A stretch of DNA of 64,000 nucleotides, taken from Podarcis muralis. Taxonomy: Eukaryota. The stretch is taken from contig NC_135655.1 in assembly GCF_964188315.1 (NCBI RefSeq), forward strand, positions 85,436,001 to 85,500,000. The letters are read 5' to 3'. The notes under the pieces are model-generated. The model saw only the letters and a list, made by a program, of their open reading frames with translations, was not told the DNA's origin and did not search any database. Made by a program: the position numbers and the translations under genes. Shown piece by piece: positions 3,901 to 30,500 of the stretch (the first letter of the stretch is position 1; every line of letters begins with the position of its first letter).

Positions 3901-5761
3901 ACTCCTCCTTTCCCAAGAAGGATGTTTTGGGGTTTCATGTCGCGGTGCAAGATTCGGTGGGAGTGCAGATAATAGAGCGCCGAGACCAACTGAGAGGCAA
4001 TATCTTGCACCTGAAAGAAAATGACAACCCTGATACTTTGCAAAGCCCATTTAATCCTGTAGGGATGCTCCACATCTCCAGCATAAAACTTCCATTCCTT
4101 TTTGTTATCTTTGCTGATGCCCCTCAATTGTGAATCACAAGTCCTTCCCCAACACACAGAAATCTACTTGTATTATCCTAAGACAATTAGATCTATTTTT
4201 ATCCTTGAGGGCAGCAGAGAGCAAGCATTTCCACTCTTCTATGTACCCTTCAGGTATTTGAAGACTGCAATCATGTCCATCTGCTGCTAGACTTCTCTTC
4301 TCCAGATTCAACGCTAGTTCAAAACACATATGTTCACTCAGGCATCACTTGAAGTGTGACTCCAGATATTCTTATTTATTTAGGATAAGGGCTGTAGCTC
4401 AGTGGTAGAGCTTTGCATACAGAAGGTCCCAGGTTCAATCCTCAGCATCTGGGAATGTCCCTTGTCTAGAACACTGGAGAGTCACTGCCAGTCAAAGCAG
4501 ACATAACTGAACTAGATGGACTAATGGTTTGACTCAAGGCAGCTTCCTATCTTCTTATCAATAATCATGGTGAATTTTATACTGAGTATGTAATGTTTTA
4601 TGGTTTATTGTGTTTTTATATTGTACCATACACCACTTTTGATATTCCAATTTGAGCAATATATAAATTGGTTAAAAAAATTAATAAACAAAAAGACATA
4701 CAGTACCAACTTCCTTAAACCTTTCCTTGATTTAAGCTGCTCTAATATCATCCCTGGTATCAAATTCAGAGGGATGGGTCTCTAGTTTCTCAGATCATCT
4801 TTTTAAAAATTAGGACTGTCTTGTAAGCACCTCAGTCACTATTCCAGGAAATCTAACAGGTTCATGTCAAAGTACACAGCTGGAGGGTTTATGGCCTAGC
4901 AAAGACTGACACCTACCCACACTCCAGCTACTCTCCCATTCCTGGAGTCATTCATCACACTGAATCCCCACTCACTCTTCTTGTCATAGTTACCTGCTCC
5001 TCAGGCAAGTTCCCATCATCCTCAAGGATCTGAAAAAGCTCCCCTTCAGCATAATCTGTCACTACCACAACCTGAAGGAGATAAACAAGACCAGAATGCC
5101 AATGAGAACATTTTCAAAGATGGGACACTTGTGGGTAGGGAATGACAATCTGACTAAGCTCTCTGTGCTGTTTGAAGCCAACAGGAAACCACCATCAAAA
5201 GAAGAGTGTGCAGCAGCTACCAACACATTCTTATTTGATGAAGGTGCCTATGGAGAGCTCCAAACTCTAAGTGTGTTGGGACATTCTTTGGATATTGTCA
5301 TTCTGCTGATAGGTCTTGGCAGGTTAATTGCCTGATGCAGCCTCATGAACCAATAGGCTTGATGTGGCAATCCAAACTTCCACAGACAAGATGTGTAATT
5401 TAGATAGCTGTTACCAAAATGGATAAATTTTAGTTCACTCCTCCTAGGTACTCATTGAGACATCTGGAGAACACCATATAACCTAAACTCCATCAAACAA
5501 AATGTAGCCATTTTCAGGCCTTTCTGCTTCTTGGGGGACTTTCCACAGAGCCAGGAAGACACCATTTTCTTCTTCACCTCCCACATTTAAAAAGGACTCC
5601 CAGCAAGTCCCTTACCTCTTTATCAGTTTCAAAACTGTCAAGCATCTGGACAATGTTGGGATGATGAAGCCCCCTCATGATCTCAATCTCTCGCTGCAAA
5701 TTCTTCAGCTCTTTCTGTGAGCGACCCACTTTAGGGATAAACTTCAAGGCCACCACCTGCC

Positions 5762-13790: not shown

Positions 13791-15499
13791 TGGTAGCCAA
13801 ATGCTATTGCCCATGGGTAAACTGTAGGATCTTACAGTGAATCAGTGCTGTGTAGAGGGCTGTTTGAGGCTGAATCCCTGAACTAAAAGCCAAGCTTGAA
13901 AAATAACTATTAAGTAACCCTGTTCTAAAATAGGTGCTAAAAATAGAAGGACTATAAGGGAGTACAGGTCTCCTTGTTTACTGTCCAGAACTATGGAGAG
14001 GACTTGCCATTAATAGTGTCACTATTTTTAGACATGCCTTATTGATGGTATTGGCATATGTGAAAAGAGTGGACTTGAATCAACATTGACTTGGTGGCTG
14101 TTGACCACAGAGGGTTCTTTAAGCCCCCCAACTGTGGCCAGACTGAATGTTGGAGTCTCCCACTGCCTCATTGTAATTGGCTAATGTTCAGTAGTGATTG
14201 ACCTTGAACTGCAAACATCAAACATGCCTATTCTAAAGAGCCTTTAAATTATAAGAAGTCCAACTCCTTACTCACCCAGTAGTTGGATTTGGAGCTAGTA
14301 TTGGCAACAAAGGCTTCAGCTCCAGGTACACCAAGGCTCTTGTCTTTGCCTGTTTTCACAAATGTGATATCCTGCAATGGTTTACTAACTGTAATCCTGT
14401 CCAGAGTTCACGTGACTTATGTTTTGGGTCTTATCATCTTTGATTCGAGCCAAATTTGGTTTTGTTGGGGTGAGAAGTCTCTCATGCTCAGCTGGCTTTC
14501 CCCTCCTAACCTTATGGCTGTGTGTATGTGCATTCACCCACACACCATTCAAGAACAGCTCTACTCTCCATTTGGGAGGGTAATACCAATGTACCTACCT
14601 ATTTTTAGGCTACACAGTCCCTGTCATCTCCCTCAGCAAAATGCAGCCTTGTCTTCATGGGTATTTCTGCTCAGAGGAGGAGTCTGTAGCAATATGGAGT
14701 ACATGTGGCCACTATGCAAACATTTTGAACAGACTTTCCTCCACTTGTATTTCTATTTTGTCACATATATATGGCCTTCCTCCCCCCACAACAAATTTTA
14801 CCCTAGGCTGTGTGAAAGTTCCCAAGCTGCTTAAATTCCTTATATGTCTGCAAAATGTCCCCCCACCCCTCCCCAAGTGAAGCTTTGCCAGACTTCGTAA
14901 TTTTCCTTTTCTGCTTAGCCACAGTAACATTGTAGATGTGTGACAACTTTACAGAGCACAGTGGCCAAAATGACCTTACAATAGAAGTGTGACTGATTTT
15001 AAACCAGTTCATGCTAGAGGCTAAAGGATGTCATTACTTATTTGCATGCATGCACATATACCAGTTTGAGCAGTTCTGCCTATTAAAAGGATTGATGTGA
15101 GATTGATTTACCTCCCTGCACTGTGGTGAGGTGGAATTTGTGGTGATGTGATGCAAAACAGGAGTATTAAAAGCAATTTGAGTAAACCAATCTATGATTC
15201 TCTTTCGTGGATAAAGAACATAGCTGCTGCTGTGCTGCATGTGATGAGACCATTCAACATTAGAAACCATCTAAAAAGAGGCAGGGAGGTAATAACCTAT
15301 GACCCATGTAGTTTAGCTAAAATGAGGAACCTTTTGATTATAAATGAAAAACAATCGGGTTCTAATCTGGACATCTTTCTGTTGGATTCACATTTTCTTT
15401 TTTTTTCCTTCTTCTTTTTTGTAAACTATTCTTCTAAGGAGAAAGGCTGCTTCATTTTGCACCACTTGAAACTTCTGAACAATAATGAATGGTAGCCTA

Positions 15500-16790
15500 C
15501 ATAGAATATAAAACATGGGTAACACAGTATCTAGATCCTGATTGGATTTTCTGGACAGGGTTATAATACCGTTAAAGAAATTGGAGTTCTTGTTGAAAAT
15601 ACACTGAAATGGATATACAAAGAACTCTGGCCACAAGTTTCAATACAACGAATAGTTCCTACTCGAGAGTTGAAAAGAAAAACGTGTATATTCTGCTAAG
15701 AATAACAGTTTGAAGCTAATAGTAAATTTAAACACAACGTGTGAGTACGATAGTTTTAAGGTAATAGTAAATTTAGATACAACGTTTAATTGCAGAAATA
15801 ATGTAATTTCAAATATGGAGTGATATAGTATAAAGGTACATAAAATACCAGTAAACAACAATTGTTTTATACAAGTCTCAATGGCAGTCAAAAAGAGTCC
15901 ATATTATATAAAATCAGAACAAAGAATAAAGAATCAAATAGGGCCAAAAAGGAGTATCCGGAGTGTGAATCAGATGTACGACTCAGTAGTGGTGACCAGG
16001 ACAGGGCCCTGTTTCGGAGTAAACGCCTTCTTCAGCTGGTAATATCAAATAATATGTCAAAATAGAACAAGATTCTTCAATACCATAGATCATAAATATA
16101 ATAAAGTATATACATACTAAAGTGTATTAACACATATCATGATATTTGGTTCCATACCTCGGTTTTTTGAGGACTATAAATCTGTTGGAAGTCTATATCA
16201 TATAATTCTTTTGTGTTTCTTTTTTGACTTGCGTCTAGAAATAAGAATTTACAAGAGTTATTATTTCCAGTCAAATTATTTGTGAAAAACGGACAACAGA
16301 TGAGTGTTTTCTCACCTTAGATAATTGAATCCAAGTTTTCTTGCGTTTCTCTGTGCGTTTTCTATTAGGGAGTGAGATCATTGTCTTATATGTGTGTCTG
16401 TGGGGGAGGAGGATAGGCTCTCCCTTCTTAAAGGTGTAAACAGAGAAGGGATTTAAAGTCCAAGGTCATCTATAGTGGTTTTTTCAAAGAAAAGAACTGT
16501 AGTCTTGATGTTCATTCAAGCCCTTGGGGGACATCGTTTCAAACAAATGAATATATCGTGCTTCCTGTTGTAACAATAGTCTATCAATATTTCTCCTGGT
16601 ATATTAAATCTACTTTTGGTTTCCAGATAATGAAGAAGACAAAATCCTCCTCCATATGTTTTTGCTGTATATAATGTTCCACCATTGGGGCTTCTAGCAC
16701 TCTATCGGATCCTGATTGTTCTGCCTTCCTTTTTACCAATTGCTCTCGATCCTTTAAGGACTTTAGCCCTCATTTCATAAACCCACCCCA
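15500..16790 (-). mobile_element. Decayed, 5'-truncated Penelope-like retroelement (GIY-YIG endonuclease C-terminus plus 3' UTR/pLTR); boundaries approximate
   Basis: - strand translation EAPMVEHYIQQKH..FFIIWKPK, a frameshift, then NIDRLLLQQEARYIHLFETMSPKGLNEHQDYSSFL* (16591-16484) resembles the Penelope endonuclease C-terminal P.GLN motif. A hammerhead lies downstream on the same strand. Confidence 0.7.
15995..16040 (-). ncRNA. Minimal type I hammerhead ribozyme (Penelope-associated)
   Basis: - strand reads ACCAG CTGAAGA A-GGCG-TTTA-CTCC GAAA CAGGGCCCTG TC CTGGT. It has the CUGANGA and GAAA core, a 5-bp stem I (ACCAG/CTGGT), a short stem II, a palindromic stem III and a GUC cleavage triplet (predicted cut between 16000 and 15999). 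Confidence 0.8.
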
Positions 16791-17272
16791 TTTTCCCCCA
16801 TCATGTCCACATCCAGCAATTTCTTTTATAAAATTTCTGAAGTGCAGGATCTGTTTCTTCCTGAACCTTCCTAGTCTTTCCCATGCTTTCGCCTATTTGT
16901 CTGTGATATATTAGAGTTACTGTCCCACCCTGGGTTAAAACTAATACCTCAAGTATCTTCTCTCTCCACCCCCACCCCCCCAATGTATGAAAGAACAATT
17001 CCCCCTTTCCATGTTTTGCTGTTGTAACATTGGCAAGAAGAGCAAGTGCTGTTTCACACCTGGCTGTTGCTATAAATAGAAGTGGAACCACCCGCCTCAA
17101 GGAGAACACTCAATGGCACTAACAGTACGTCCTAACCCAGCCTGCATGGAGAACCTCATTGTAACCATTAACTCAGATCAAACAGACAGGAATCGTTAGA
17201 GATCTGGCAGTGCTGTTTACGGCATACGTAGCTTACTGCGCGCGCACACATATATATGTGCTTGTTTGTTTT

Positions 17273-17340
17273 TGTTTAGTCGTTTAGTCGTGTCTGACTC
17301 TTCGTGACCCCATGGACCAGAGCACGCCAGGCACTCCTGT
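17273..17340 (-). mobile_element. RTE-BovB LINE 3' end fragment
   Basis: gtttagtcgtttagtcgtgtctgactcttcgtgaccccatggaccagagcacgccaggc resembles the antisense BovB 3' tail as recalled. Confidence 0.55.
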
Positions 17341-17560
17341 GAGCGGTAGTCTTGTAATCTGGGGAACCAGGTTCGAGTCTCCGCTCCTCCACATGCAGCT
17401 GCTGGGTGACCTTGGGCCAGTCACACTTCTCTGAAGTCTCTCAGCCTCACTCACCTCACAGAATGTTTGTTGTGGGGGAGGAAGGGAAAGGAGAATGTTA
17501 GCTGCTTTGAGACTCCTTAAAGGGAGTGAAAGGCGGGATATCAAATCCAAACTCTTCTCT
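17341..17560 (+). mobile_element. CORE/MIR-like SINE remnant
   Basis: B-box-like ggttcgagtc, CORE-like gtgaccttgggccagtcacacttctct..cctcactcacctcacag, and tail aaggcgggatatcaaatcc. Confidence 0.5.
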
Positions 17561-17879
17561 GAGGCCCGGGGCAGGTATGCCTGGCTCCCCCCACTCTACA
17601 AAGGCTTCCTGGTCACCATCTTGAATCATGATGACAGACCAAAACATGACTTTGGCATGACTTCACCCAATTTTTGGTGTGACATGTCCAAACTCACAAA
17701 TTACACTATCTGTTTAAAAATAACAACAACAGGTTCCTAAAAATTCCCAGGCAGTGCCAGGCACCCCCTGCTAATAAAAGTGGGGGAACCATCTTAGTGA
17801 TATTTTATATTAAATCCTGATGGGATTCTGATGCTGATGTACTGGGGATGCTGTGAAAATTATTCTGTGCATGAATGAG

Positions 17880-17960
17880 GAACACTTACCTGTGATTCCT
17901 GCATAGCAGGGGTGGAATAAATGAGCTTTGGAATCCCTTCCAAGTCTACAATTCTACGAT
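17880..17960 (+). mobile_element. CR1 LINE 3' end remnant
   Basis: gatgagc-like ...cccttccaagtctacaattctacgat, typical of the CR1 3' terminus with an ATTCTATG-like tail. Confidence 0.45.
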
Positions 17961-18503
17961 CCCACAATAAACACCCTTTGGAAGCACCCCAAAAGCCCAA
18001 GACGTACGAGAAAACAAATGATTATTTCCCTTTGGCTTTGACACATCAAACAGGGTTTTAAATGCAATAATTCCTACTTGGAAATAATTTATACAGTGGT
18101 ATAAAGAGGCATGACATGGGTCTGGAGATTCTTGCATTTCATTCAATATTGTGAAACAATGTTTTTGTTCAGGAATCACATGAGACGCAACCAGAACTTA
18201 GTACTAAAGTGAGTTACTTAAGCTGCATATATACCTTTAAAGCATATTCTGCTTCTGGGCACTGTCCTTTACTCCTTGCAGAGTTACGATTCCCAGCAAC
18301 CCTTAAAAAAACTGCAGTATCTAGAATTCTTTGACGGAAAGAATGTGCTTTGAATATAAAAGTGTAGTGGATATACTCCAGTGGGAAGGGAAGGGCAGGA
18401 GAGTAGAGTGTGAAGGGATCGTGGTTTATCACCAGCAAGCATAGATTGAAAGGAGTGGATTGAGGCTGTAGGAGAGCAATCAGCTCATAGGCCAAACAAA
18501 CTA

Positions 18504-18769
18504 CAGTGGTACCTCAAGTTAAGTATTTAATTCGTTCCGGAGGTCCATACTTAACCTGAAACTGTTCTTAACCTGAAACACCACTTTAGCTAACGGGGCC
18601 TCCTGCTGCTGCCGCGCCGCCGGAGCACGATTTCTGTTCTCATCCTAGAATCATAGAATTCTATGATCCTGAAGCAAAGTTCTTAACTTGAAGCACTATT
18701 TCTGGGTTAGCGGAGTCTGTAACCTGAAGTGTATGCAACCTGAAGCGTATGTAACCCGAGGTACCATTG
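18504..18769. mobile_element. Tigger-like (TcMar) MITE
   Basis: TIR CAGTGGTACCTC..GAGGTACCATTG; TA on both flanks (18502-03, 18770-71). Confidence 0.85.
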
Positions 18770-19021
18770 TAGAAGCTTTATTCTTTCAAATGGTAACTAC
18801 CTAGACTCAGTACAATCTGTTGGAAGAGACTTTGCCCAAAAAACACACTGTAGAAGGCTCAGTCTAGTGCTGAATGGGGAGCATTTGCTGGCTAAAGGAT
18901 GTGGTGGGGAGGTTGCTGTTCTCAGGAAACTATCCTGACCTTAGTTGACTATCAGGTTATGAGAAAGGGCTAAATCAAGCGATGAAGCATCCCATTTGCC
19001 TTTCTGCATCCATCATCCCAG

Positions 19022-21432
19022 GTTGCTGCAGATCAGATCATCTTCCACGATGGACCAATAGCAAGTGATGACAAAGACAATAAATGTATCTGCAGCATAG
19101 AGCTCCCCGACACTACTTTTCCTTCACATCTGATGATTATCCTGGAAAACGCTTATAAGAACCTGAGTACTATTTATGAAGAAGAAGCGAGCAAGGTAAG
19201 GGGGCACACTTCGGCACATAGTATGCCAAATATTTATTCCCTGCCTTGAATCACTAATGCTGTCTAGTTCTGACTGTTTCCAGCAGCTAAACAATATAAC
19301 ACAACACAATCAGTGACTACAGTATCATATGAGCACTGATCCAGAGCATATTTTCTACAGCGTTTATATTTGCTTACATGTAAGATTGGCTTGTTAAGAA
19401 ATTGAACTGCATCCTTCTCATATTATTTCTTACAAGTCTGGCTGATGAAGAATTGATCAAGATTGGCTGATGAAGCATTGAACGAAACAGATTGGTTATC
19501 CAGAAACTCTGTTCTGGAGATATTTGGTGACAGATTATGTATATATCAAACTTTTGAATTATTCTACCGCGACTGGTGAAGAAGATTTAGAGACTTTGGT
19601 TGTGATTTCTGATCATTTGTATTAGTCTATAAATAGTGTTTAGTGCCATTGTTATTGGCCATCATGCTGTGTTATATTGTTCAGCTTGTCTATATTGCAA
19701 CACAGGGGTCTGTTTACGGATTACTGTTTCCAGCAGCTGGCAACACTACACAGGGGAATGGTACTGGCGGGGGGGGGGGGGCGTGTGTGTGACAGAATGT
19801 GGCTCACAGATCTTTCAAGGCATGTTAACCCTTCCTCCAAAGCACTGTTACTGGATAGCCTTGGTAAAATAGTCCACCACCACCCACTATAAACTAAATT
19901 TGTCAGTCACAGAAGTGCTCCGAGTTCTCCCGTCTCCACAGCCCAATGTTTGTGAAAGTGCAAAGTTGAAGTCTACTCATTGTCTGGATACACCTTCAAA
20001 ACTGAGTGATAAAAGAATGGTTGTTCCAGAGAAAAGGACAAGCATGGAAGCAACAATTGTAATGAAATGGTTGTTCATGATTTGTGGAAATATGTTTTCA
20101 GTATCCTGCTAAGTGTGTGTCCTGCAAATTTCTCTAGGCTATGAAACTCCAGACAGACTTGGCATCATTTAATAGTACCTTGGAGAAATTAACCGCAACA
20201 GTGCGTCAGGTTGAGATGGAAGGTATCAAGGATGAAGAAACTTATCAAGACCTCCTAGAAAAAATTAATCATACGAAGCGATGGGCTCGGGATCTGACTA
20301 ATGCTCTAAGTGCAACTGGTGTGGGCATTACATCTTTAACCGAACAGGTAGGTACAAAATGTTTGGGAGCACAGCAGTTTGAATTGTGCTTGCACATTGT
20401 ACTGAATACACCAAGAGTGGTGCTCCTGTTTGAGAGGATTCAAACCTGCTTTAGAAAGGGCATTTGGGGGGCTGTTTGGGGCTCTTCAAGGAAACTTTTA
20501 AAATATTTCTGTGCAATGCTGAGTACTCCATGGCTAGAGAGCTGCTTCAGGGAGCAGGAAAACATGGGATGAGAACTTTGCCTATTTTAATGTTTACCAC
20601 TAGCATAAAGTCTCAAAAGAGGTTATTCCTTCCTTACCTCTCCCCATTATTATTTTTTAAAAAAACCAGATACTTTCAACATTCCATGGCTCATGGACCT
20701 ACCGTAATTAAGAATGTTGTGAGCAAAGGCAAAAACCTCTGCTCCAAGGCATGTAAGATGGAGCCAAGCATCATTTTCATCAGGGATTTGGGGACTGGTA
20801 GTCCTACTAACTTAGTAGCACTAAGCCCATCCCTGAGCCAAAGGATGCTGTGCCAAGGCTCTTTGAGCACCTGCTGCCACAACCACTATCCTCTTTCCTG
20901 GCCTCAAAGGTGATTTCTTAGCAATTGAGGACAGGGATGTGAGGAGGGAGGCTGTGCAGAACACAAGTGCCTTCAAGCCTTTTGCAAGTGCTTGCACTGA
21001 CTTCTTGCAGAAAGCTTAAGCTCACAAAAGTGCAATCCTTTGGAATTCAAACAGTGAGATATTCATGCATCCCTAAACTTAATGACTAGATGCACCTAAG
21101 TCCTGTTCAAATGTTCTTCAAAAGTGGGTGAGAATAGCACATGGAGGGGAGGGGAGTTGGGGCCATGCACTCACATCTCCATCTACAGCATCCCCACTGC
21201 CCCTCCTCTGACATACACACATTGAATGAGGAGGTCTGGAAGGGGACCTCAGTGGCTGAGCATATCGTAGATCCTCCCTGCAATTGGAAAACCAGTACTA
21301 GCAGGTTTCCTGATCTCAAGGAGGATTCTAAGGGCATTCCCTTAGGCAACATCCACACCATACATTTGAAGCACATGGCTTCCCCCAGAGAATCCTAGGA
21401 AATGTGTTTTGTGAAAGGTACTGGGAACTGTA

Positions 21433-21483
<51 letters not shown>

Positions 21484-22340
21484 TTTATACCCCGCCCATC
21501 TGGCTGAGTTTCCCCAGCCACTCTGGGTGGCTCCCAATCAGTGTTAAAAACAGTACAGCGTTACATATTAAAAACTTCCCTGAACAGGGCTGCCTTAAGA
21601 TGTCTTCTGAATGTCAGGTAATTATTTATCTCTTTGACATCTGATGGGAGGGCGTTCCACAGGGCGGGCGACACTACCGAGAAGGCTCTCTGTCTGGTTC
21701 CCTGTAGCCTCACTTCTCGCAATGAGGGAACCGCCAGAAGGCCCTCGGCGCTGGATCTCAGTGTCCGGGCTGAACGATGGGGGTGGAGATGCTCCTTCAG
21801 GTATACAGGACCGAGGCCGTTTAGGGCTTTAAAGGTCAGCACCAACCCTCTGGGAGGTGTAAACTACAGTTCTCAGGACACTAACTGCCCAATTTCTGGT
21901 TGAAGCCAATTGGGCCTCTGGTTGATCTCAGTGATGGGCTGAGATATAAGGGCTCAGGCAGGCCTTAAGATATCCTGGACCCAAGTTGTTCAGGGTTTTG
22001 AATTTTTGTGAAAACTGCAGGTTCTTTTCACACATAGTACATCTTTATTGTATGATGCTTAGCTGGGGGGTAGGATTTGAGAAATAAAGGCATGCCCCCT
22101 TAGCACCTTTGAGATATTTCCCAGCCATTCAGAAGCCTTGGAGAAGATCCAGCTATTAAGAACAATCAGTCAGTGTCTCTGGGTCATAGAATTATAGAGT
22201 TGGAAGGGACCGCAAAAGTCATTTAGTCCAACTTCCTGCAATGCAGGATCTTTTTGCCCAATGTGGGGCTTGAACTCATGTCCCAGAGATTAAGAGTCTC
22301 ATGCTCAATCCATACAATAACAAGAGAGGTAATTGGTTAC

Positions 22341-22402
<62 letters not shown>

Positions 22403-25213
22403 TGTTTGTGCATGCTTTAGCCTCTCTCATTCAATCACTCATGAAGCTGTCAAACACATCTACCACCACAACACACAGGGAGACGCTGCAGTAGAAAATT
22501 GCTTGGGGCTGTTCAATTAAACATGTGCTAATATATTTCAGGTCTCCAATGTCTCCAGTATTGTGTGGGAACTAGAAAAGTTTGACGAGAACAATGTGTT
22601 GTTGACACATAGGGAAATAGCCACTCTCAAGAAACAACTGGCCGATTGCGAAGACTCTGTTACAAATCCCAATTCTGGCCTCTCTCCCTCTGGAAACTGG
22701 ACTCCAGAGTTTGGTGAGTCCTACCGTGTGATTGTGGGCTGGAACTTCTCCTTACATTGGTTTGTCTATAAGCTACATTATCATCATTATCATCACCATT
22801 ATCACCGTCACCAGTATTAATATTTATTTGTTGCTTTTTTCACAAAGGTGGCTGAAAGCAGCTTGTGCTGTAAAAACCACCATTAAAAAAAAAATCTAAG
22901 AAAAAGAATAACATCACGGCATAAAATGCTCATTGTATATAAAAGAGCAGATCCAAGTCAATCTGCCCCACTAAAAATGTGAGTGGAAGAAGACACCACA
23001 AACATAGTTAAGTACTCTCCCAAATGAAGGCCCAAAAGCCTAGGAGAATTAAAAAAATGTTTTTGCCTGGGACCTAAAGGCAGATAACGCAACCAGGCAT
23101 GCCTCCCTGGGGAAAGCGCTCTACAAACGGGGAGCCACCACTGAGAAGGCTTGCTTCAGTCTGGTCACCCCACAAACTTAATCCAGCTTCTTCTCACAAC
23201 TAGCACATCCTCAGCGAGCTATTTGAGGCACCACCTGACCCAGGAAAATTTTACCGTCATTTAAGCTTTGAGCTCTTTCACTAGATCAGTTCTCAGTCTG
23301 TACCGGTAGAGATCAGGGTAAAAGGAATTTCCTAATAATTACTGGATTACCTCCCACTTAATAGTTCTTTATATTATAAAGAGGCCTGCAGAGCCCTTCT
23401 GGTGCCACAGGGTCCCCCCGCCATTTGACATTAGACTTGAAAGAAGCATTCTGTTGCACTTACTAATAGAATGTAGCATGTGCTTGTGCTTAGTGCTCAC
23501 AGCAGTTCTCAGGTTTGCAAATGATCCCAAAAGGGATGATGACCACCTGCTTTAGTGAGAATTTTGGAAGGCAAACATGTAATGAACAGCTGATCAATGA
23601 CAGTACAGAGGAGGAATTGGGAAGCATTATGCAGAGAAAACACAGCAGGGCAGAGGAGTCTGGTTTGGGGGCCTGACCCGTTTTCTAAACGCAGTGGGAT
23701 AAAACTTGGCAGAGCTTTTGAAACCAGCAGAATGCCTAACATGGTCACAGAAAACAAAGATGATTTAGTTACTTATCTTGTAAAATTTATGCACCTCTTG
23801 ATTATTAAAAAAACCAAAAAAAAACACAAAAAAAAACCTCAGAGCAGTTTGAAGGCGGAGAAAAACTTGTCAAGAGGAGCCACAAACAAAAGTAATTCCC
23901 TTTCTATTCCCTGGCAGGTAACTGCGACAACAAGGTGTTGATAAACGTTAAAGGTAAAGGTACCCCTGCCCGTATGGGCCAGTCTTGACAGACTCTAGGG
24001 TTTTGCGCCCATCTCACTCAAGAGGCCGGGGGCCAGCGCTGTCCGGAGACACTTCCGGGTCACGTGGCCAGCGTGACAAGCTGCATCTGGCGAGCCAGCG
24101 CAGCACACGGAAACGCCGTTTACCTTCCTGCTAGTAAGCGGTCCCTATTTATCTACTTGCACCCGGGGGTGCTTTCGAACTGCTAGGTTGGCAGGCGCTG
24201 GGACCGAGCAACTGGAGTGCACCCCGCCGTGGGGATTCGAACCGCCGACCTTTCGATTGGTAAGTTCTAGGCACTGAGGCTTTTACCCACAGCGCCACCC
24301 GCGTCCCTGTCTGATAAACGTTAGCAAGCCACTTATAGTGAAACTCAACTGGCGAGGTTTAAGCTACAAATTCGGAGCTTGGGGAAAGGACTTTGCTGTT
24401 GGAAACAAGACTCCTGACGCATACTGGGTTGCCCCGCTCAACACAGACGAGCGTTTGTTGGAAACCTACTGCATCTACAACTATTCCGACCTGCTGTTCT
24501 ACAAAAGCCAAATAGAGAAAAGCCTTTCTCAATTTGTTGGGTTCACCTGGAACTACATCAACTGTGGGCAGGGAAGCGGAACTATTTTGTACAACGGCAG
24601 CTTCTATTACAACTGCTACAACTCCAGGAACCTGTGCAAGCTGGATGTGGCAACCAGTAAGGTCCACCGCAAGACCGTCGAAGACGCCGTGTTCAACAAC
24701 TGGTACTCTTATAGCGGAATCAATTGGCATGACTTTGATTTCTCCGGGGATGAGAATGGACTGTGGCTCATTTACTCCACGGAAAAAAACAAGGGGAAAA
24801 TAATGATTGGGCAGCTGGATCCCAATACTCTGACAATAGTCAAGTCATGGCAAACCTCACTGTACAAGCCTAAGGCAACTGGTACCTTCATGATCTGTGG
24901 GGTGATGTATTCCTTGATGCGGGTGAGTGAACACAAGGAGAAGAGCTTTTACAAATATGACACTAACACAGCCACAGAAGGCTCTATGGACATCATCCTG
25001 GAAAAGCTCACAGGCACACCGCAAAGCATAAGCTACAACCCCAATGATCACAAGCTATACATGTACAATGATGGCTACCTGGTCAGTTATGATGTGATAT
25101 TCCGACGCGTACCCCTGTTCCAAAAGAGGAGCGTGGTCAGTGTGAAAGAGCCAGATACTTTTGCGATGGTCAGTAAAAACCACTTCAGCTCACGAGACTT
25201 TGCCATAGCCTGA
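19022..25213 (+). CDS. Olfactomedin-4-like secreted glycoprotein gene; last exon interrupted by a SINE, first exon unresolved, may be a young pseudogene
   Basis: Phase-consistent exons 19022-19195 (KCICSIELPDTTFP, cf. OLFM4 CQCSVSLPDTTFP), 20138-20347 (coiled coil), 22542-22713 (LEKFDENNVLLTHREIATLKKQLADCE), and a terminal exon 23918-23950 + 24324-25213 (GNCDNKVLINVSKPLIVKLNWRG..YWVAPL..GQGSG..DFDFSGDENGLWLIYST..FMICGVMY..SISYNPNDHKLYMYNDGYLVSYD). The exon and phase pattern mirrors OLFM4 as recalled. About 492 aa without the first exon. Confidence 0.85.
21433..21846 (-). mobile_element. L2-clade LINE 3' fragment with (TTA)n tail
   Basis: ORF VLTFKALNGLGPVYLKEHL..RTLRSS..RAFSVVSPALWNALP..FRRHLKAALF is the typical L2 ORF2 C-terminus; (AAT)n tail at about 21433-21482. 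Confidence 0.85.
22185..22310 (-). mobile_element. CR1-tailed SINE (Squam2-like)
   Basis: Antisense CR1 tail catagaattatagagttggaaggga.. joined to a tRNA-like head (gggcttgaactc). Confidence 0.5.
22345..22406. repeat. Compound (CT)n(GT)n microsatellite
   Basis: Directly visible. Confidence 0.9.
23951..24311 (-). mobile_element. Full-length young Sauria (Squam1-type) SINE inserted in a coding exon
   Basis: 5' end GGGACGCGGGTGGCGCTGTGGG (A box), GGTTCGAATCC (B box), (ACCTTT)n 3' tail; exact 12-bp TSD TGATAAACGTTA at 23939-23950 and 24312-24323. Confidence 0.92.
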
Positions 25214-25876
25214 AAGAGAAACAAGGCCAGGCACGCACAACATTTACCTATTGGCAAATACATATTTTAAATGGTAAAAGTCTTGATTGTAAGGCCAGCA
25301 GACAGATTCTATCTTTAAAGGGTATAATTAAACAAGCCCTTTTCTTCACAGTGCAGTCAAGTGTCTACCTGTGTGAAGAGAACATGTCACAGGGTTGGCT
25401 GCTCTCACCATTGAACCTCCACTGCCTTTCCCTCGCACCAAATGATTCTGGCAGTAACAGGATTAGGGCTTTGGTGTGGAATCTGCTATAGATCATGCCA
25501 CTGAGTAACTAGGAGTTCATAAACAGCAGACATACACCCTGAAATCACCTTGCGTGTGTTGTGTTTGTGTGTGTCTGTCCCCTCCGCCTAGTTATGACAC
25601 CTTTTGGGCCTCTCCTCAGGTGTTAACATTTGCCATCTGGAGGACATAAGTTCCACAACACCTGAGCTTCACATTTATTCATTTTCAAGAGTTGCATTGT
25701 AGGAGTTATGTTGGGTCGCTCTTTATTTTCTTTACAAAAAGGTGGCCTCACTGAGGTGGACATGTGGATGGCATCATCCTCATGATTATCTCATCCCGCC
25801 TAAACAAATCCATGCATGCAAACAACCCTTTTCCTGGGGAAGCCATATGCAAAGCGGTCTCGGGGTTTGTTCAACG

Positions 25877-27542
25877 TCAGGATATAAGAGCTTGCACGTT
25901 CTTAAGGGCTGCGTCCGGATCCGCCTTGTATAGCATGAAGTGGCCTTGGACTTGCGCGGCACTGATCTGATCAGAGGCAGACACGGCCTGTTTGGCAAAC
26001 TCCTCGGCCGCAGCTGCTGGCTGGTCTGGGTAGAACCTCTGGAACATGCGCCCGAGCTGCCACTCTGAGCAGTACCCCACATACTGCTTCAGGTCCACCC
26101 GGCCAGGGCGAACTAGGGCTGGATCGAGCCTGCAGGTAAAGAGGAGAAGACAAATGAGGCTCAGCAAATGCTCAGGTGGGAAATATGGTTCTCTATGCTC
26201 CTCTCACTTGGGGTATCACCTCCTTGTTCTCTCTCCAACCCCAAGAAGATACAGGGCTAGGGGAATCTTCTCTCCCCTTTATTTTTTTGAGCTACTCTCT
26301 AAAAGAATATAAAGTAACAGTGCCTTGTGATTTAACTGCACCCACGTCTTGCTGCACTCACCCATCATGCACCTCTTTCTCCATACCTGCCAAGTTACCC
26401 ATCCCCTCCTACAATCTCAGAGGAGCCTGCATGGAACCAGGAACAGTAAACAAGGACAGAACCAGATCTTCAGCTTCTGTGTTAAATGCTGGAAACCAGC
26501 ATGACCAAAGGAGGCAGAAGTCCATATGTATATATACCCCAGACCACTCCCTAACAAGCATGACCCCAGCGTTACCCAAAACCTTACCCAGCCAGTTTTA
26601 ACTGGCTGACCCTGTCTGCTGAGCATTTGCTCTTCTACCCTACACATGACTCCTTCAGCACCAGGCTACATGGCTGGCAGAGTCCTGTGCTTGTGGGAGA
26701 GGATGTGTCACAGGTCTTGGAGACTACAAGAGCCCCAAGATAAGATTCTCTTCCGTCTTCTCCTATAGTATCATCTTCTGGAACAGGAAGTGTGTCTTCA
26801 TTCCTGCCGCCTTCCTCCTTTTTATACTTAAAATAGTTACCAGCTGGTCCCCAGAAAGGCAGACTTTGCCTCATAAAGACAGCACTTCCAAGGGCTGGGA
26901 CACAAACTGCCCTCCTCTGTTACTCACTGCAATCTCCTTCTTGACTGAGTTACAAGGAAGCTCATGGAGTTGCCTTGTGTGAGCTAGGGATGGACGGATC
27001 AGTTTATTTGGGGTCCATGTCCAAAGTGTTACAGGTGTTAAGTCTCCTCTGTTGCTTTTCCACTTTAAGATCTGTATTTTTTTTATTTAAAAAATCCATA
27101 CAAAAATTCGTATTTAAAAATGCATTTTATTATAAATGCATATTTAAATAGTATTTATCGCAGGGTATGCATCTCTAAATGCATTTCCTCCTAAAAATAA
27201 TAATAAATCTTAATGCATTTTGGGAACCAAGGACAGTATTGCAAAATTTGGGGGAGTGGGGAAGCTGAAGGATAATTGTGAATTCGTTTGGGAGGTACAA
27301 ATTTGGCTAGCTTGCTTGAAAATGCAAACAAAACAAAACTCTCCTCCACCCCTAGCTTGTCCTCACCTCAAAAACACCAATGGAGACATCTTAGGCACTG
27401 TGTTACTTGAGGAATCCTTGGTCCCACCAAGGGAAGTGAACCCTTTGGATCGAAGTGGCCTACCACCAAAGGGACTCCATTTGCAGGCTTCCTCCCAGCC
27501 ACTGAGCGGTGAAGTAGGCTGATTTGCTGGAATACTGGTCCT

Positions 27543-27582
<40 letters not shown>

Positions 27583-30500
27583 CTGTTTCCCTGGCAAAAC
27601 AACAGTCCTGCTCCTGTCTGCGTTTGGGCTACCGAGGGATTCAAAAACCTGCCTCAGGGGATACCTAGCTTCTCCTCGTGGCATGCTTTGGCACCGAATG
27701 TGAGAGGGTTGAGTGGAATGGGTTGGGCGAGGTTATCATGGTGTTAGTGTCCTCACCACATGCCGGCTGGTGGTTTCAATGTGTCACCAGTGTGGGACTT
27801 CATGTTGTGAGGGGAAGGTGATGAAGGAATTTCTCTATGGGAATGTCAGTTGTTGCTACATTGTCTCCTCCCCCTCCCCCTTTCCCCTTCCTGCTTCTGT
27901 TACAACAGTTTTGATTTAGCTGCTGGAGGAACGTAGAATCCTAAACCACTGTAGACTCCAGCCTATCAGCCACTACCTTCCTTGGGTGCCATTAAATGAT
28001 CCTTCCCAAGCAAAAGGTTATCTTCTGCAGCTAACAACCTCTCTATCTGCCCCATTTTCTGTGCAACGCTTCTGACCTGTCCACATGATTGGTGGTCATG
28101 AATACAATCCTTGCTTCGGAGGAAGCCACACCATCCAACGCGTTGAGAAGGCCACTGAAAGTCAGGCGTCCCATGCCTTGGTATGCGCTGGGGTCTAGAG
28201 GGAAACACAGCGGCACAGAGACAGCTCAGAGGGAGACACTATAGGTACAGTTGTGACCAAGGGCTGCCCAAATTCTGTCTAGGTTTATAGCCTTCCAGGG
28301 GAAGGGCAACAATCCCACTGTTGTGGTCTTATGTCACAGTAGTACCAGCTTTATGTTCCCTGCCTGATGTGCAGTGGCTTGCAAAATGTTCCTGACACCC
28401 TGCTGTCCAAATAGATACATGAAGGGGTCAGAGAAAATCATGCCACCTGGTGGCAAAATGCAAGTCGATAGAAAGCAGGACAATAAACAGTCAGGATCCT
28501 ATGTCCAAAGAAGGCTGGCAAAAAGAAGTGCCTCTAGGATCTCTGCTGGCGAATCTCTTCCACAGTGCAAAAACTGTAAACTTGTCCCCAAGAGCCTGTC
28601 TTGTTTCAAGTCTCTCTTTGTATATGGATAACTGAATTGGAATAGGTGTCACATTAAAGCCTGCAGATAATTATTTATCATTATATTTATTCAATCTATT
28701 GGTAGCTTGCTACGTAAAAAGTATCGAAGTAACTCACAAAGTTTTAAAGACATAAAGCAAAAACAAAAACAAAAAAACCACTCAATAAGAAGAAAAGAGA
28801 GCAATACATTGCATTTAAAAAGAAACTGTACCAAAATCCAGAGAACAGACACAGTAAAGCAGCCGGGGGAAAAACATGGCAGCAAAGCATACCATCCAGC
28901 AAATCATCACCACCATCTGTCAAATACCTGAGTTAAGTTTTTACCTGGTGCCAAAAGAATTTTAATGATAGCCCCAAGAGGACCCCACTGTGAAGAGCAT
29001 TCCACAAGTGGGGAGCCCTGACTGGAACACGCTCTTCCTTGTCACCACACTCCAGACCTCCCTCAGAGTGGACACCAGTAGAGGATCAAAAAATGAAGGG
29101 TCTGGGTAGGTTTTTAAGGGAAGACATTTTCCAAAAGGCATTGGTGTCCTGAGTCATTGACCCCTCTTTGTCAGTACCAGGTCACCAACCCGAATCCCAT
29201 TGCAAATTGCAGCTTGGAGGAAGGAGCTACCGTATTTTTCGCACCATAGGACGCACTTTTTCCCTCCTAAAAAGCAAGGGAAAATGTGTGTTAGTCCTAT
29301 GGAGCGAATGCAGGGGGGAGGCAGGCGGGAAAAGCCCCCAAGAGCCGCACACAAGCTCTGTGCGCTCTTGCGGGCTTTTCCACAGGAGGGAGAAGGGACT
29401 GACTGGCCGCATCAGTCCCTTCTCCCACCTCCCAGGAAAGCCAGGAGAAGCCGTGCAGCCCTTTTAAAGTGCACGCGGCTTCTGCCGGTTTTGCGGGAGG
29501 TGGGGGAATTCCCCCACCTCCCAGAAAAGCCAGGAGAAGCCGCGCAGCCCCTTTAAAGAGCTCACGGCTTCTGCGGGCTTTTGCGAGAGGTGAGGGAATC
29601 CCCCCACCTCCCAGGAAAGCCAGAAGAAGCCGTGCAGCCCTTTTAAAGTGCGCGCGGCTTCTGCCGGTTTTGCGGGAGGTGGGGGAATTCCCCCACCTCC
29701 CAGAAAAGCCAGGAAAGCCCTGCGCAGCATCTCCCGGCAAGGAGAGGCTGCGCGGGGCTAAAGGGGAAGGCAAAACAGCGAGCGGGATCCATCCCGCTCG
29801 CTGCCTTGCCTTCTTCCATAGCCGCGCGCAACCCCTCCGCAAGGAGAGGCTGCGCGGGGCTAAAGGGGAAGGCAAAACAGCGAGCGGGATCCATCCCGCT
29901 CGCTGCCTTGCCTTCTTCCATAGCCGCGCGCAACCCCTCCGCAAGGAGAGGCTGCGCGGGGCTAAAGGGGAAGGCAAAACAGCGAGCGGGATCCATCCCG
30001 CTCGCTGCCTTGCCTTCTTCCATAGCCGCGCGCAACCCCTCCGCAAGGAGAGGCTGCGCGGGGCTAAAGGGGAAGGCAAAACAGCGAGCGGGATCCATCC
30101 CGCTTGCTGCCTTGGCTTCTTCCATAGCTGCTCGCAACCCCTCCGGCAGGGAGAGGTTGTGCGCACCCTGTACGCTGCTCTTTGGGGCTGGGGGGGGGGA
30201 GATTTTTTTCTTGATTTCCCCCCCTAAAAACTGGGTGCGCCCTATGGTCCGGTGCGCCCTATGGTGCGAAAAATACGGTACTATTCAGCTCTCATTCCCC
30301 CCACTCTGAATGAACAACTAGCTTGGGAAAGTTGCTGCGGTGCAGCACTTAATCAGGATGCCTCCACAGAGTTACAACACAGGGGTGATGAACGCTTGGG
30401 CCCAGCTCAGTCAGAGGCAGCAGAAAAGGGCAGCCTGGAACAAAAGAGTGGGGAGGCGCCATCTGCCTGTCACTCACTTTCGGCAGCAAGATCCCGGCTG

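What the first reader, a model, noticed from the sequence alone, without database searches (positions are those of the whole stretch)
23918..24340. Sauria SINE inserted inside the olfactomedin coding exon: fresh knockout or intronization in progress
Seen: removing the SINE and one 12-bp TSD copy (373 bp) restores GNCDNKVLINV-S-KPLIVKLNW seamlessly. Read-through hits TGA at 23986-88, yet the 296 codons downstream have no stop or frameshift. The antisense SINE tail supplies GT donors (AAG|GTAAAG after 23953, AAG|GTACCC after 23959, both phase 1). Joining these to the nearest AG (24324) frameshifts, but joining to ttatAG (24338) restores frame, giving LINVK-V-KLNW or LINVKGK-V-KLNW; a CTGAT branch-like motif sits at 24311-15. 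Inference: either a very recent, possibly segregating null allele, or a SINE being converted to a new intron at a cost of 2-4 residues.
Basis: partly seen in the sequence, partly recalled or inferred. Interest (0 to 1): 0.85.

Follow-up and report, generated by a model that had tools for sequence, protein, structure and literature searches.

The report
Segregating SINE insertion disrupting lizard olfactomedin gene
A jumping-gene copy (Sauria SINE) sits inside the last coding exon of an olfactomedin-like gene in the wall lizard reference genome. It is a real allele that some wall lizards lack, it stays in the RNA rather than acting as a new intron, and the gene already looked to be decaying in this genus.

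Summary
An antisense 361-bp Sauria SINE (23951-24311) with a perfect 12-bp target duplication splits exon 5 of an OLFM4-like gene. The read-through stop is at 23986-88 and the downstream frame is open.

The window is Podarcis muralis GCA_964188315.1. The empty site is the ancestral state in P. raffonei, Lacerta agilis, Zootoca vivipara and two further relatives. It also occurs in another P. muralis DNA sample, so the insertion is segregating or lineage-limited.

In a carrier's RNA assembly the SINE head runs unbroken into the exon, and the spliced exon 2-3-4 contig stops about 61 nt after exon 4. Both fit SINE retention. No splice to AG 24338 was seen, so intronization is not supported.

The RefSeq protein XP_077779540.1 reads the empty-site sequence. 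No canonical splice can produce that from this DNA, so the annotated 373-nt gap is an artefact.

"Fresh knockout" is only partly right:
- The ancestral signal-peptide exon 1 is deleted in both Podarcis species, with different boundaries.
- dN/dS between the two species is about 1.3.
- The P. muralis branch carries six changes at near-invariant family positions.

The SINE is most likely a late hit on a transcribed, decaying gene. This is an ordinary kind of event; its main practical value is correcting the annotation.

The parts
17801..17827 (+). Junction of the deletion that removed the ancestral promoter and exon 1, which encodes the signal peptide
   Evidence: Zootoca L003 positions 1372-3447 have no counterpart anywhere in the 64-kb window. 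That stretch contains the TATA box and exon 1 at 3001-3042. Its flanks map to window 17557-17830 and 17827-18503. L. agilis keeps the exon.
18180..18208 (+). Replacement first coding exon used by the RefSeq model (MRRNQNLVL), followed by a GTGAGT donor
   Evidence: The gene range of P0121 in L001 starts here and the translation is. Zootoca has GCAAGT where P. muralis has GTGAGT.
19022..19195 (+). Exon 2
   Evidence: tblastn with the Zootoca and P. muralis proteins, plus the splice sites.
20138..20347 (+). Exon 3
22542..22713 (+). Exon 4
   Evidence: A spliced RNA contig in X1 covers it with exact boundaries.
23918..23950 (+). The 5' piece of terminal exon 5 (GNCDNKVLINV), ending in the first copy of the target duplication (23939-23950)
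23951..24311 (-). Sauria SINE, 361 bp, antisense to the gene
   Evidence: Sequence. The word depth of 10^4-10^7 in these bins shows a very high copy family. The tail and target-duplication signature match PMC13295347.
23986..23988 (+). First in-frame stop (TGA) of the read-through. It lies 69 nt into the last exon.
23954..23961 (+). Candidate GT donors in the antisense SINE tail (GT at 23954 and at 23960)
   Evidence: They match the donor consensus at 7 of 9 and 6 of 9 positions. No use was seen in RNA contigs.
24312..24323 (+). Second copy of the 12-bp target duplication
   Evidence: The joint 23938->24312 has 12 ambiguous letters.
24337..24338 (+). Candidate AG acceptor that would restore the frame
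   Evidence: Pyrimidine content upstream is 0.50, against 0.70-0.85 at three of the four real acceptors. The X1 contig runs through it unbroken.
24324..25213 (+). The 3' piece of exon 5. It encodes the whole OLF domain and tail and includes the stop codon.
   Evidence: Open frame. Pfam OLF, E = 5.7e-64.
24478..24482 (+). Site of a 3-bp in-frame deletion (loss of one Ser codon) private to the reference haplotype
   Evidence: X1 and X5 carry CTC and X32 carries CCC here. All three other lacertids have TCC. No gap occurs in this column in any of 150 homologues.

Best explanation
**What it is.** This is a Sauria SINE retrotransposition allele in the terminal coding exon of the olfactomedin-like gene that lies between RNF25 and BCS1L in Podarcis muralis. 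The reference haplotype and at least one other haplotype carry it. Other P. muralis DNA and all relatives examined have the empty site.

**What it does to the RNA and protein.** The element is not removed from the RNA. Transcripts of the carrier allele read from exon 4 into the antisense SINE tail and meet TGA after 12 foreign codons. That stop lies in the last exon, so exon-junction-dependent decay should not act on it and the RNA stays detectable. This step is inferred from the standard NMD rule. The predicted product keeps the N-terminal coiled-coil part and lacks the whole OLF domain. The allele is therefore null for olfactomedin-domain function.

**Prior state of the gene.** The gene was probably already under relaxed constraint in Podarcis. 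It has lost the ancestral signal-peptide exon, its dN/dS is about 1, and it carries radical changes at invariant positions. The insertion is therefore most likely a nearly neutral late hit on a transcribed, decaying gene.

**The annotation.** The public gene model hides the lesion by skipping exactly the 373-bp indel.
For: **Identity of the window.** L001 (GCA_964188315.1, OZ076954.1) is 100% identical to window 15180-28213, SINE included.

**Insertion hallmarks.** The target duplication matches 12 of 12. In element orientation it starts with TA, and the tail is ACCTTT-type, as described for Sauria SINEs.

**Empty site.**
- The joint 23938->24312 (skips 373, 12 ambiguous letters) appears in X31, a 3.4-kb contig of organism A DNA.
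- It appears in X32, a 7.5-kb contig of organism C DNA.
- It appears in X5, an RNA contig of organism B that continues upstream into spliced sequence.
- P. raffonei, Zootoca and L. agilis each have a single copy of the target.

**Second carrier haplotype and SINE retention.**
- X1 contig 24281->25400 begins in the SINE head. It shows no break at 24312 or 24338/9.
- It differs from the window at 8 letters and a 3-nt indel.
- The spliced exon 2-3-4 contig in X1 ends 61 nt after exon 4. That is where k-mers would enter the repeat.

**The RefSeq reading is impossible by splicing.** None of the 13 equivalent 373-nt removals has GT-AG, GC-AG or AT-AC ends. Yet P0121 reads LINVSKPLIV and is otherwise 100% identical to the window.

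**Relaxed constraint.**
- Exon 1 is deleted in both Podarcis species, with different boundaries.
- dN/dS between P. muralis and P. raffonei is 1.33. Deeper comparisons give 0.34-0.69 for the OLF domain.
- In the OLF domain the two tip branches carry 12 non-synonymous to 2 synonymous changes, against 7 to 9 on the stem. Fisher's exact p = 0.026.
- R246C, loss of S250, L256F, Q333H, A394S and I405S fall on columns that are 86-99% conserved in 150 homologues.
- P. raffonei has W345C at a column that is W in 150 of 150 homologues.
Against: - Only assembled contigs could be laid, not raw reads. Contigs drop rare forms, so a minor spliced isoform cannot be excluded.
- 53 joints were not displayed.
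- The 61 letters after exon 4 in X1 were not shown, so their identity is inferred.
- The substitution counts are small. The all-gene comparison of tips with stem gives p = 0.09.
- The N-terminal half of the gene evolves fast in all lacertids. Positive selection could also raise dN/dS.
- The replacement N-terminus MRRNQNLVLNIPFAFL... has a basic start and a hydrophobic stretch. It might act as a signal peptide, in which case SINE-free alleles could still be functional.
- The allele frequency of the insertion is unknown.
Confidence: 0.7

Rival explanations
1. Fresh knockout of a fully functional gene. SINE-free P. muralis alleles encode a working secreted olfactomedin that uses the replacement first exon. 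On this reading the insertion is a deleterious or recently arisen loss-of-function allele.
For: - The gene is transcribed and correctly spliced in organisms A and B.
- The 493-codon frame is open apart from the SINE.
- The new first exon has a strong donor that Zootoca lacks, and a signal-peptide-like hydrophobic start.
- The empty allele has flanks nearly identical to the carrier's, with 1 of 572 and 2 of 132 letters different. The target duplication is perfect. Both suggest a young insertion.
Against: - The ancestral exon 1 and promoter are lost.
- dN/dS between the two Podarcis species is 1.33.
- R246C and L256F are also carried by the second SINE-bearing haplotype, X1. A394S and I405S are shared only by the two SINE-bearing haplotypes. 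None of the four derived residues occurs in any of 150 homologues.
- P. raffonei shows parallel damage: W345C, a late nonsense codon, and its own exon 1 deletion.
Confidence: 0.2
2. Intronization in progress. The spliceosome removes most of the SINE by joining GT 23954 (or 23960) to AG 24338. This would give an in-frame protein, LINVK-V-KLNW, four residues shorter than the ancestral one.
For: - The donor matches 7 of 9 consensus positions.
- A CTGAT branch-like motif lies 24 nt upstream of AG 24338.
- SINE-driven intronization of last exons is known in primates (PMC2394776).
Against: - The carrier RNA contig is continuous from the SINE head through 24338 into the exon.
- The upstream spliced contig stops at the SINE tail instead of continuing into exon 5.
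- No such joint was listed.
- The acceptor's pyrimidine content is only 0.50.
- The documented Alu cases all lie in 3' UTRs, not in coding sequence.
- The gene shows no sign of selection that could favour a rescue.
Confidence: 0.07
3. Assembly artefact. A SINE was wrongly placed in the exon by the assembler.
For: Nothing positive.
Against: - A perfect 12-bp target duplication is the product of retrotransposition, not of misassembly.
- An independent run, X1, holds the SINE-exon junction on a haplotype that differs from the assembly at 8 positions and one indel.
Confidence: 0.01

Closest known systems
Polymorphic SINE insertions in coding exons that create loss-of-function alleles (for example Alu insertions in human disease genes and canine SINEC_Cf exon insertions; recalled from general knowledge, not tested here)
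   Same: - A non-autonomous retroposon with a target duplication sits inside a coding exon.
- Filled and empty alleles coexist in one species.
- A premature stop follows shortly after the junction.
   Different: - The element is a Bov-B-dependent Sauria SINE in a lizard.
- The hit gene appears already dispensable, so no phenotype is expected.
- The stop lies in the last exon, so the RNA persists.
Alu 'intronization' of last exons (Sela et al. 2007, PMC2394776)
   Same: A SINE inserted into a terminal exon carries potential splice sites. The antisense orientation supplies GT and AG motifs.
   Different: - The known cases lie in 3' UTRs and have mRNA or EST support for the spliced form.
- Here the insertion is in coding sequence and the available RNA assemblies show retention only.
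Unitary pseudogenes and gene loss in progress
   Same: - An orthologue is intact in sister genera.
- The first exon is lost, dN/dS is about 1, and radical substitutions occur at invariant sites.
- Lesions arise independently in sister species, and transcription continues.
   Different: - The long reading frame is still open in SINE-free alleles.
- A replacement first exon exists, so loss of function before the SINE is inferred rather than shown.
OLFM4 / amphibian-type olfactomedin family (Pfam PF02191)
   Same: - The architecture is a coiled-coil N-terminus followed by a C-terminal OLF beta-propeller.
- The gene has five exons, with the OLF domain in the large last exon.
- It is 40-50% identical to vertebrate OLFM4.
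   Different: - It lies between RNF25 and BCS1L.
- It belongs to a squamate, turtle and amphibian 'olfactomedin-like' group.
- In Podarcis it lacks the ancestral signal-peptide exon.

Membership tests
Sauria SINE | 3' end made of ACCTTT-type repeats | tested here: met
   In element orientation the copy ends ...GGGGTACCTTTACCTT directly before the target duplication. PMC13295347 gives (ACCTTT)n as the Sauria SINE tail.
Sauria SINE | Short target duplication that begins with T (usually TA) in element orientation | tested here: met
   The 12-bp duplication reads TAACGTTTATCA in element orientation. The signature is described.
Sauria SINE | tRNA-related 5' head with pol III boxes | tested here: inconclusive
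   ARAGORN calls no tRNA here. A B-box-like GGTTCGAATCC and an A-box-like TGGCGCTGTGG are visible in the head.
Sauria SINE | Very high copy number in squamate genomes | tested here: met
   Summed word depth in the four SINE bins is 10^3-10^7, against about 10 in the flanks, in all four runs from three species.
Sauria SINE | 3' region shared with Bov-B LINE | not tested
   No Bov-B reference sequence was compared.
Segregating transposable-element insertion | Filled and empty alleles both present in conspecifics, with the empty state in outgroups | tested here: met
   Filled: the window and X1. Empty: X31, under the same species label. Also empty: P. raffonei, L. agilis and Zootoca and organisms B and C.
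Spliceosomal intron (intronization) | Canonical boundaries that restore the frame | tested here: met
   GT 23954 or 23960 with AG 24338 restores the frame. The 373-nt gap implied by the RefSeq protein has no canonical boundaries.
Spliceosomal intron (intronization) | Spliced form present in RNA of carriers | tested here: not met
   The X1 contig is continuous across 24338 and no such joint was listed. Caveats: contigs only, and some joints were not displayed.
Olfactomedin family | OLF domain (PF02191) | tested here: met
   E = 5.7e-64 on the downstream ORF and 1.7e-66 on P0121 residues 214-477.
Olfactomedin family | N-terminal secretion signal | tested here: not met
   The ancestral exon (MFGLLLCLAVAYL in Zootoca, MFWLLLRLAVASL in L. 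agilis) is absent from the whole window. Whether the replacement N-terminus is a signal peptide could not be tested.
Unitary pseudogene | Loss of purifying selection on the lineage | tested here: met
   dN/dS is 1.33. OLF-domain tips carry 12 non-synonymous to 2 synonymous changes against 7 to 9 on the stem, p = 0.026. Hits fall on invariant columns. The counts are small.

The most novel reading that the evidence does not exclude
In carriers a minority of transcripts may join GT 23954 to AG 24338. This would yield an in-frame olfactomedin lacking four residues at the start of the OLF domain. It would be a SINE-derived intron arising inside coding sequence and caught while the insertion is still polymorphic. 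The contig-level RNA data cannot exclude a rare isoform.
Probability: 0.07. Interest if true: 0.75.

Novelty: new member of a known kind. Interest (0 to 1): 0.3.

Why it matters
- **Annotation.** The current RefSeq model for this P. muralis assembly (XP_077779540.1) reports an intact olfactomedin-like protein that this haplotype cannot encode. The model skips a 373-bp insertion/deletion polymorphism as if it were an intron. Gene-content and selection studies that use this protein would be misled.
- **Gene loss.** The locus is a compact example of gene loss in progress in a well-studied lizard genus. It shows independent exon 1 deletions in two species, neutral-looking substitution, small lesions in the C-terminal tail in three lineages, and a still-segregating SINE hit.
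- **Population marker.** The insertion is a ready-made presence/absence marker for P. muralis lineages.
- **Intron origin.** The finding does not provide evidence for intron birth.

Tried and rejected
- **Short protein query.** The first protein search used the 291-aa ORF and missed the Podarcis and Lacerta models because of the length filter. Repeating it with the 506-aa Zootoca protein found them.
- **Pfam error.** One Pfam call failed because a reference contained stops. It was repeated without that piece.
- **tRNA search.** ARAGORN finds no tRNA in the SINE head.
- **Dating the insertion.** Dating from local SINE copies failed, because the window holds only one other 111-bp fragment at 77% identity. 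One search shows at least three positions (24003, 24261, 24266) where nearly all family copies read another letter. Source-gene variation makes this unusable as a clock.
- **Relocated exon 1.** A BLAST search for the ancestral exon 1 elsewhere in the window and in L002 found nothing.
- **RefSeq gap as an intron.** All 13 equivalent placements of the 373-nt gap were checked and none has canonical ends, so the idea that it is a real non-canonical intron was rejected. The same joint also stands in DNA runs.
- **Splice scoring.** Only consensus matches and pyrimidine content were computed. MaxEnt tables were not available.
- **Read evidence is limited.** Raw-read junction counts, allele frequencies and the genotype of the reference individual could not be obtained.
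- **SINE-free exon.** For the codon analyses only, a SINE-free exon 5 was joined inside scripts.
Full report
**1. What is in the sequence**

Mapping the Zootoca vivipara protein P0001 and the P. muralis protein P0121 onto the window gives a five-exon gene on the + strand. The mapped exons are exon 2 at 19022-19195, exon 3 at 20138-20347, exon 4 at 22542-22713 and exon 5 from 23918 to the stop at 25211-13. All have canonical splice sites.

Exon 5 is interrupted after 33 nt. The string tgataaacgtta stands at 23939-23950 and again at 24312-24323. The 361 bp in between are a SINE in antisense orientation. In element orientation it ends in ACCTTTACCTT, and its target duplication begins with TA. Both are signatures described for Sauria SINEs (PMC13295347). 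Its four depth bins reach word depths of 10^3 to 10^7 in all four runs laid, against about 10 in the flanks, so it belongs to a very abundant family.

Read-through gives KGKGTPARMGQS and then TGA at 23986-88. Downstream, the frame is open to the normal stop and holds a complete OLF domain.

**2. Where the window comes from, and what the public annotation does**

The protein P0121 is XP_077779540.1, "olfactomedin-like [Podarcis muralis]". It is encoded on GCA_964188315.1 record OZ076954.1. The fetched locus L001 is 100% identical to window 15180-28213, SINE included.

P0121 matches every exon of the window at 100%, including variants private to this haplotype. Yet it reads ...LINVSKPLIVKLNW, which is the empty-site sequence. 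I enumerated all 13 equivalent ways of removing 373 nt. None has GT-AG, GC-AG or AT-AC ends, and the nearest is GT..AC.

The same 373-nt skip also stands in DNA runs. The gap in the gene model is therefore the insertion/deletion polymorphism itself and not an intron. It most likely arose from aligning transcripts or proteins of SINE-free alleles; that last point is inference.

**3. The insertion is derived and not fixed**

P. raffonei (L002), Zootoca (L003) and Lacerta agilis (L004) have the two flanks directly adjacent, with a single copy of the target.

- X32: organism C, DNA, a 7.5-kb contig.
- X5: organism B, RNA. The contig has 49 letters upstream of the joint. 23 of them lie on exon 5 and the rest were left unplaced, as expected for exon 4.
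- X31: organism A (the species label of the window), DNA, a 3.4-kb contig of depth 49.6.

The flanks of the X31 contig differ from the window at only 1 of 572 and 2 of 132 letters. That, together with the perfect duplication, argues for a young insertion.

**4. RNA of a carrier**

Run X1 (organism A) holds a spliced contig that covers exon 4 exactly, with 259 further letters upstream and 61 downstream. This shows the run is RNA. It also holds a 1,219-nt contig that begins at 24281, inside the SINE head. That contig runs without a break through the second target copy and through AG 24338 to beyond 25400.

This contig differs from the window at 8 letters. It also carries the CTC codon that the window lacks. 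It is therefore a second, independent SINE-bearing haplotype, which rules out an assembly artefact.

A k = 31 assembly would break at 24312 if an empty allele were co-expressed, and at 24339 if the proposed splice were common. It breaks at neither. The upstream contig ends about 61 nt after exon 4. That is where k-mers become pure SINE (about 23977). It does not continue into exon 5, as it would for an empty or spliced form.

These are inferences from contig ends. The 61 letters were not displayed, and 53 joints were not listed.

**5. Consequence of the insertion**

The SINE enters at residue 217/218 of P0121. The Pfam OLF match spans residues 214-477. The predicted product is 217 native residues plus 12 foreign ones, with no OLF domain.

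The stop lies 69 nt inside the terminal exon. By the established exon-junction rule for nonsense-mediated decay the RNA should escape that pathway. This fits its detection at depths similar to the intact transcript of organism B (9.7 against 10.2), although word depth is a poor measure of expression.

**6. Splice-site appraisal**

- Donor GT 23954 matches 7 of 9 consensus positions. The real donors of this gene match 7-8 of 9.
- Donor GT 23960 matches 6 of 9.
- Acceptor AG 24338 has 0.50 pyrimidines in the 20 nt before the AG. Three of the four real acceptors have 0.70-0.85, and the exon 4 acceptor has 0.55.

Sequence alone therefore does not forbid splicing, but the RNA evidence does not show it. 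Documented SINE intronizations (Alu; PMC2394776) are all in 3' UTRs.

**7. The gene was already in trouble**

*Exon 1.* The Zootoca exon 1 has a TATA box, encodes MFGLLLCLAVAYL and has a GTGAGT donor. L. agilis has a 91% identical counterpart (MFWLLLRLAVASL). Neither the 64-kb window nor P. raffonei has any counterpart. In Zootoca coordinates P. muralis lacks 1372-3447 and P. raffonei lacks 1956 to about 4283. Neither boundary is shared. The two lineages therefore lost exon 1 by different deletions.

*Replacement first exon.* The RefSeq model of P. muralis starts instead at 18180-18208 (MRRNQNLVL). At the donor, P. muralis has GTGAGT where Zootoca has GCAAGT. The model also uses an acceptor 34 nt upstream of exon 2. 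The resulting N-terminus has a basic start and a hydrophobic run. Whether it can direct secretion could not be tested.

*dN/dS.* Over 460 codons, dN/dS between P. muralis and P. raffonei is 1.33, and 1.54 for the OLF domain. Deeper lacertid pairs give 0.34-0.69 for the OLF domain.

*Polarised counts.* Using L. agilis and Zootoca as outgroups:

| Branch | Non-synonymous | Synonymous |
|---|---|---|
| P. muralis tip | 12 | 3 |
| P. raffonei tip | 13 | 2 |
| Stem | 20 | 12 |
| OLF domain, both tips | 12 | 2 |
| OLF domain, stem | 7 | 9 |

Fisher's exact test gives p = 0.026 for the OLF domain and p = 0.09 for the whole gene.

*Hits on conserved columns.* In an alignment with 150 homologues, the P. 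muralis changes fall as follows:

| Change | Family state at that column | Derived state seen in |
|---|---|---|
| R246C | R in 143 of 150 | 0 |
| Loss of S250 | S or T in 129 of 150 | 0 (no gaps) |
| L256F | L or I in 143 of 149 | 0 |
| Q333H | Q in 148 of 150 | 1 |
| A394S | A in 141 of 150 | 0 |
| I405S | I, V or L in 150 of 150 | 0 |

P. raffonei has W345C at a column that is W in 150 of 150 homologues.

*Tail lesions.* Three lineages have small lesions in the last 25 or so codons. P. raffonei has a nonsense codon 6 codons before the stop. L. agilis has a 1-bp deletion. Organism C has a 1-bp deletion at 25146.

*Distribution among haplotypes.* From, translated:
- R246C, L256F, A394S and I405S are shared by the two SINE-bearing haplotypes. 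X31 keeps the ancestral Ala and Ile at 394 and 405. It has no coverage at 246 and 256.
- N226T, loss of S250, Q333H and a tail Gly-to-Ser change are private to the reference haplotype.

Five to six such changes in 890 bp are too many to have arisen after an insertion that still has perfect duplications and near-identical empty-allele flanks. Relaxation therefore most likely preceded the SINE. This is inference.

**8. Verdict**

The finding is real. It is best read as a segregating Sauria SINE insertion that truncates an olfactomedin-like gene already drifting towards pseudogene status in Podarcis.

| Reading | Probability |
|---|---|
| Late hit on an already decaying gene | about 0.7 |
| Fresh knockout of a fully working gene | about 0.2 |
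| Intronization | about 0.07 |
| Assembly artefact | about 0.01 |

The kind of event is well known. The specific case and the annotation error are new but of modest interest.

The neighbouring genes are BCS1L (Pfam BCS1_N/AAA) and an RWD/RING gene.

Noticed in passing
window 18180-18208 and 18988-19021: P. muralis appears to have recruited a new first coding exon from former intron 1. The ATG pre-exists in Zootoca and L. agilis, and the strong GTGAGT donor replaces GCAAGT of Zootoca. The RefSeq model also uses an acceptor with only 0.30 pyrimidines, 34 nt upstream of the exon 2 acceptor.
   Followed up: partly
L002 (P. raffonei) about 5226-5232, against window 17831-18909: P. raffonei lacks both the ancestral exon 1 and the segment that P. 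muralis uses as its replacement first exon. Its RefSeq N-terminus (MAEERDERAQ...) has no hydrophobic stretch.
   Followed up: partly
window 25146; L004 near 8040; L002 near 10665: Three independent small lesions lie in the last 25 or so codons, after the OLF domain. Organism C has a 1-bp deletion, L. agilis has a 1-bp deletion, and P. raffonei has a CGA-to-TGA change 6 codons before the stop. Either the tail is dispensable or the gene is decaying more widely in lacertids.
   Followed up: partly
window 23107-23207 (intron 4): Word depth is raised about 10- to 40-fold in the three runs with coverage here (X1, X32, X31). This suggests another repeated element inside intron 4. X1 and X5 also hold intronic RNA contigs at 23067-23744.
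   Followed up: no
window 23394 (intron 4): The empty-allele contig of X31 has a 21-nt deletion relative to the window.
   Followed up: no
window 22300-22440 (intron 3): A long CT/GT dinucleotide microsatellite shows up as SLSLSL and VCVCVC ORFs in the ORF list.
   Followed up: no
window 25400-25900: The X1 RNA contig for exon 5 runs past 25400 towards the convergent BCS1L gene, whose last coding exon is at about 25877-26167 on the - strand. The 3' UTRs of the two genes may overlap.
   Followed up: no
window 24584-25400: The X31 contig over this stretch differs from the window at 21 of 817 letters (2.6%). That is as much as P. raffonei differs, while the X31 contig around the insertion site is nearly identical to the window. 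It may reflect deep lineage structure, a pooled sample or introgression in P. muralis.
   Followed up: no
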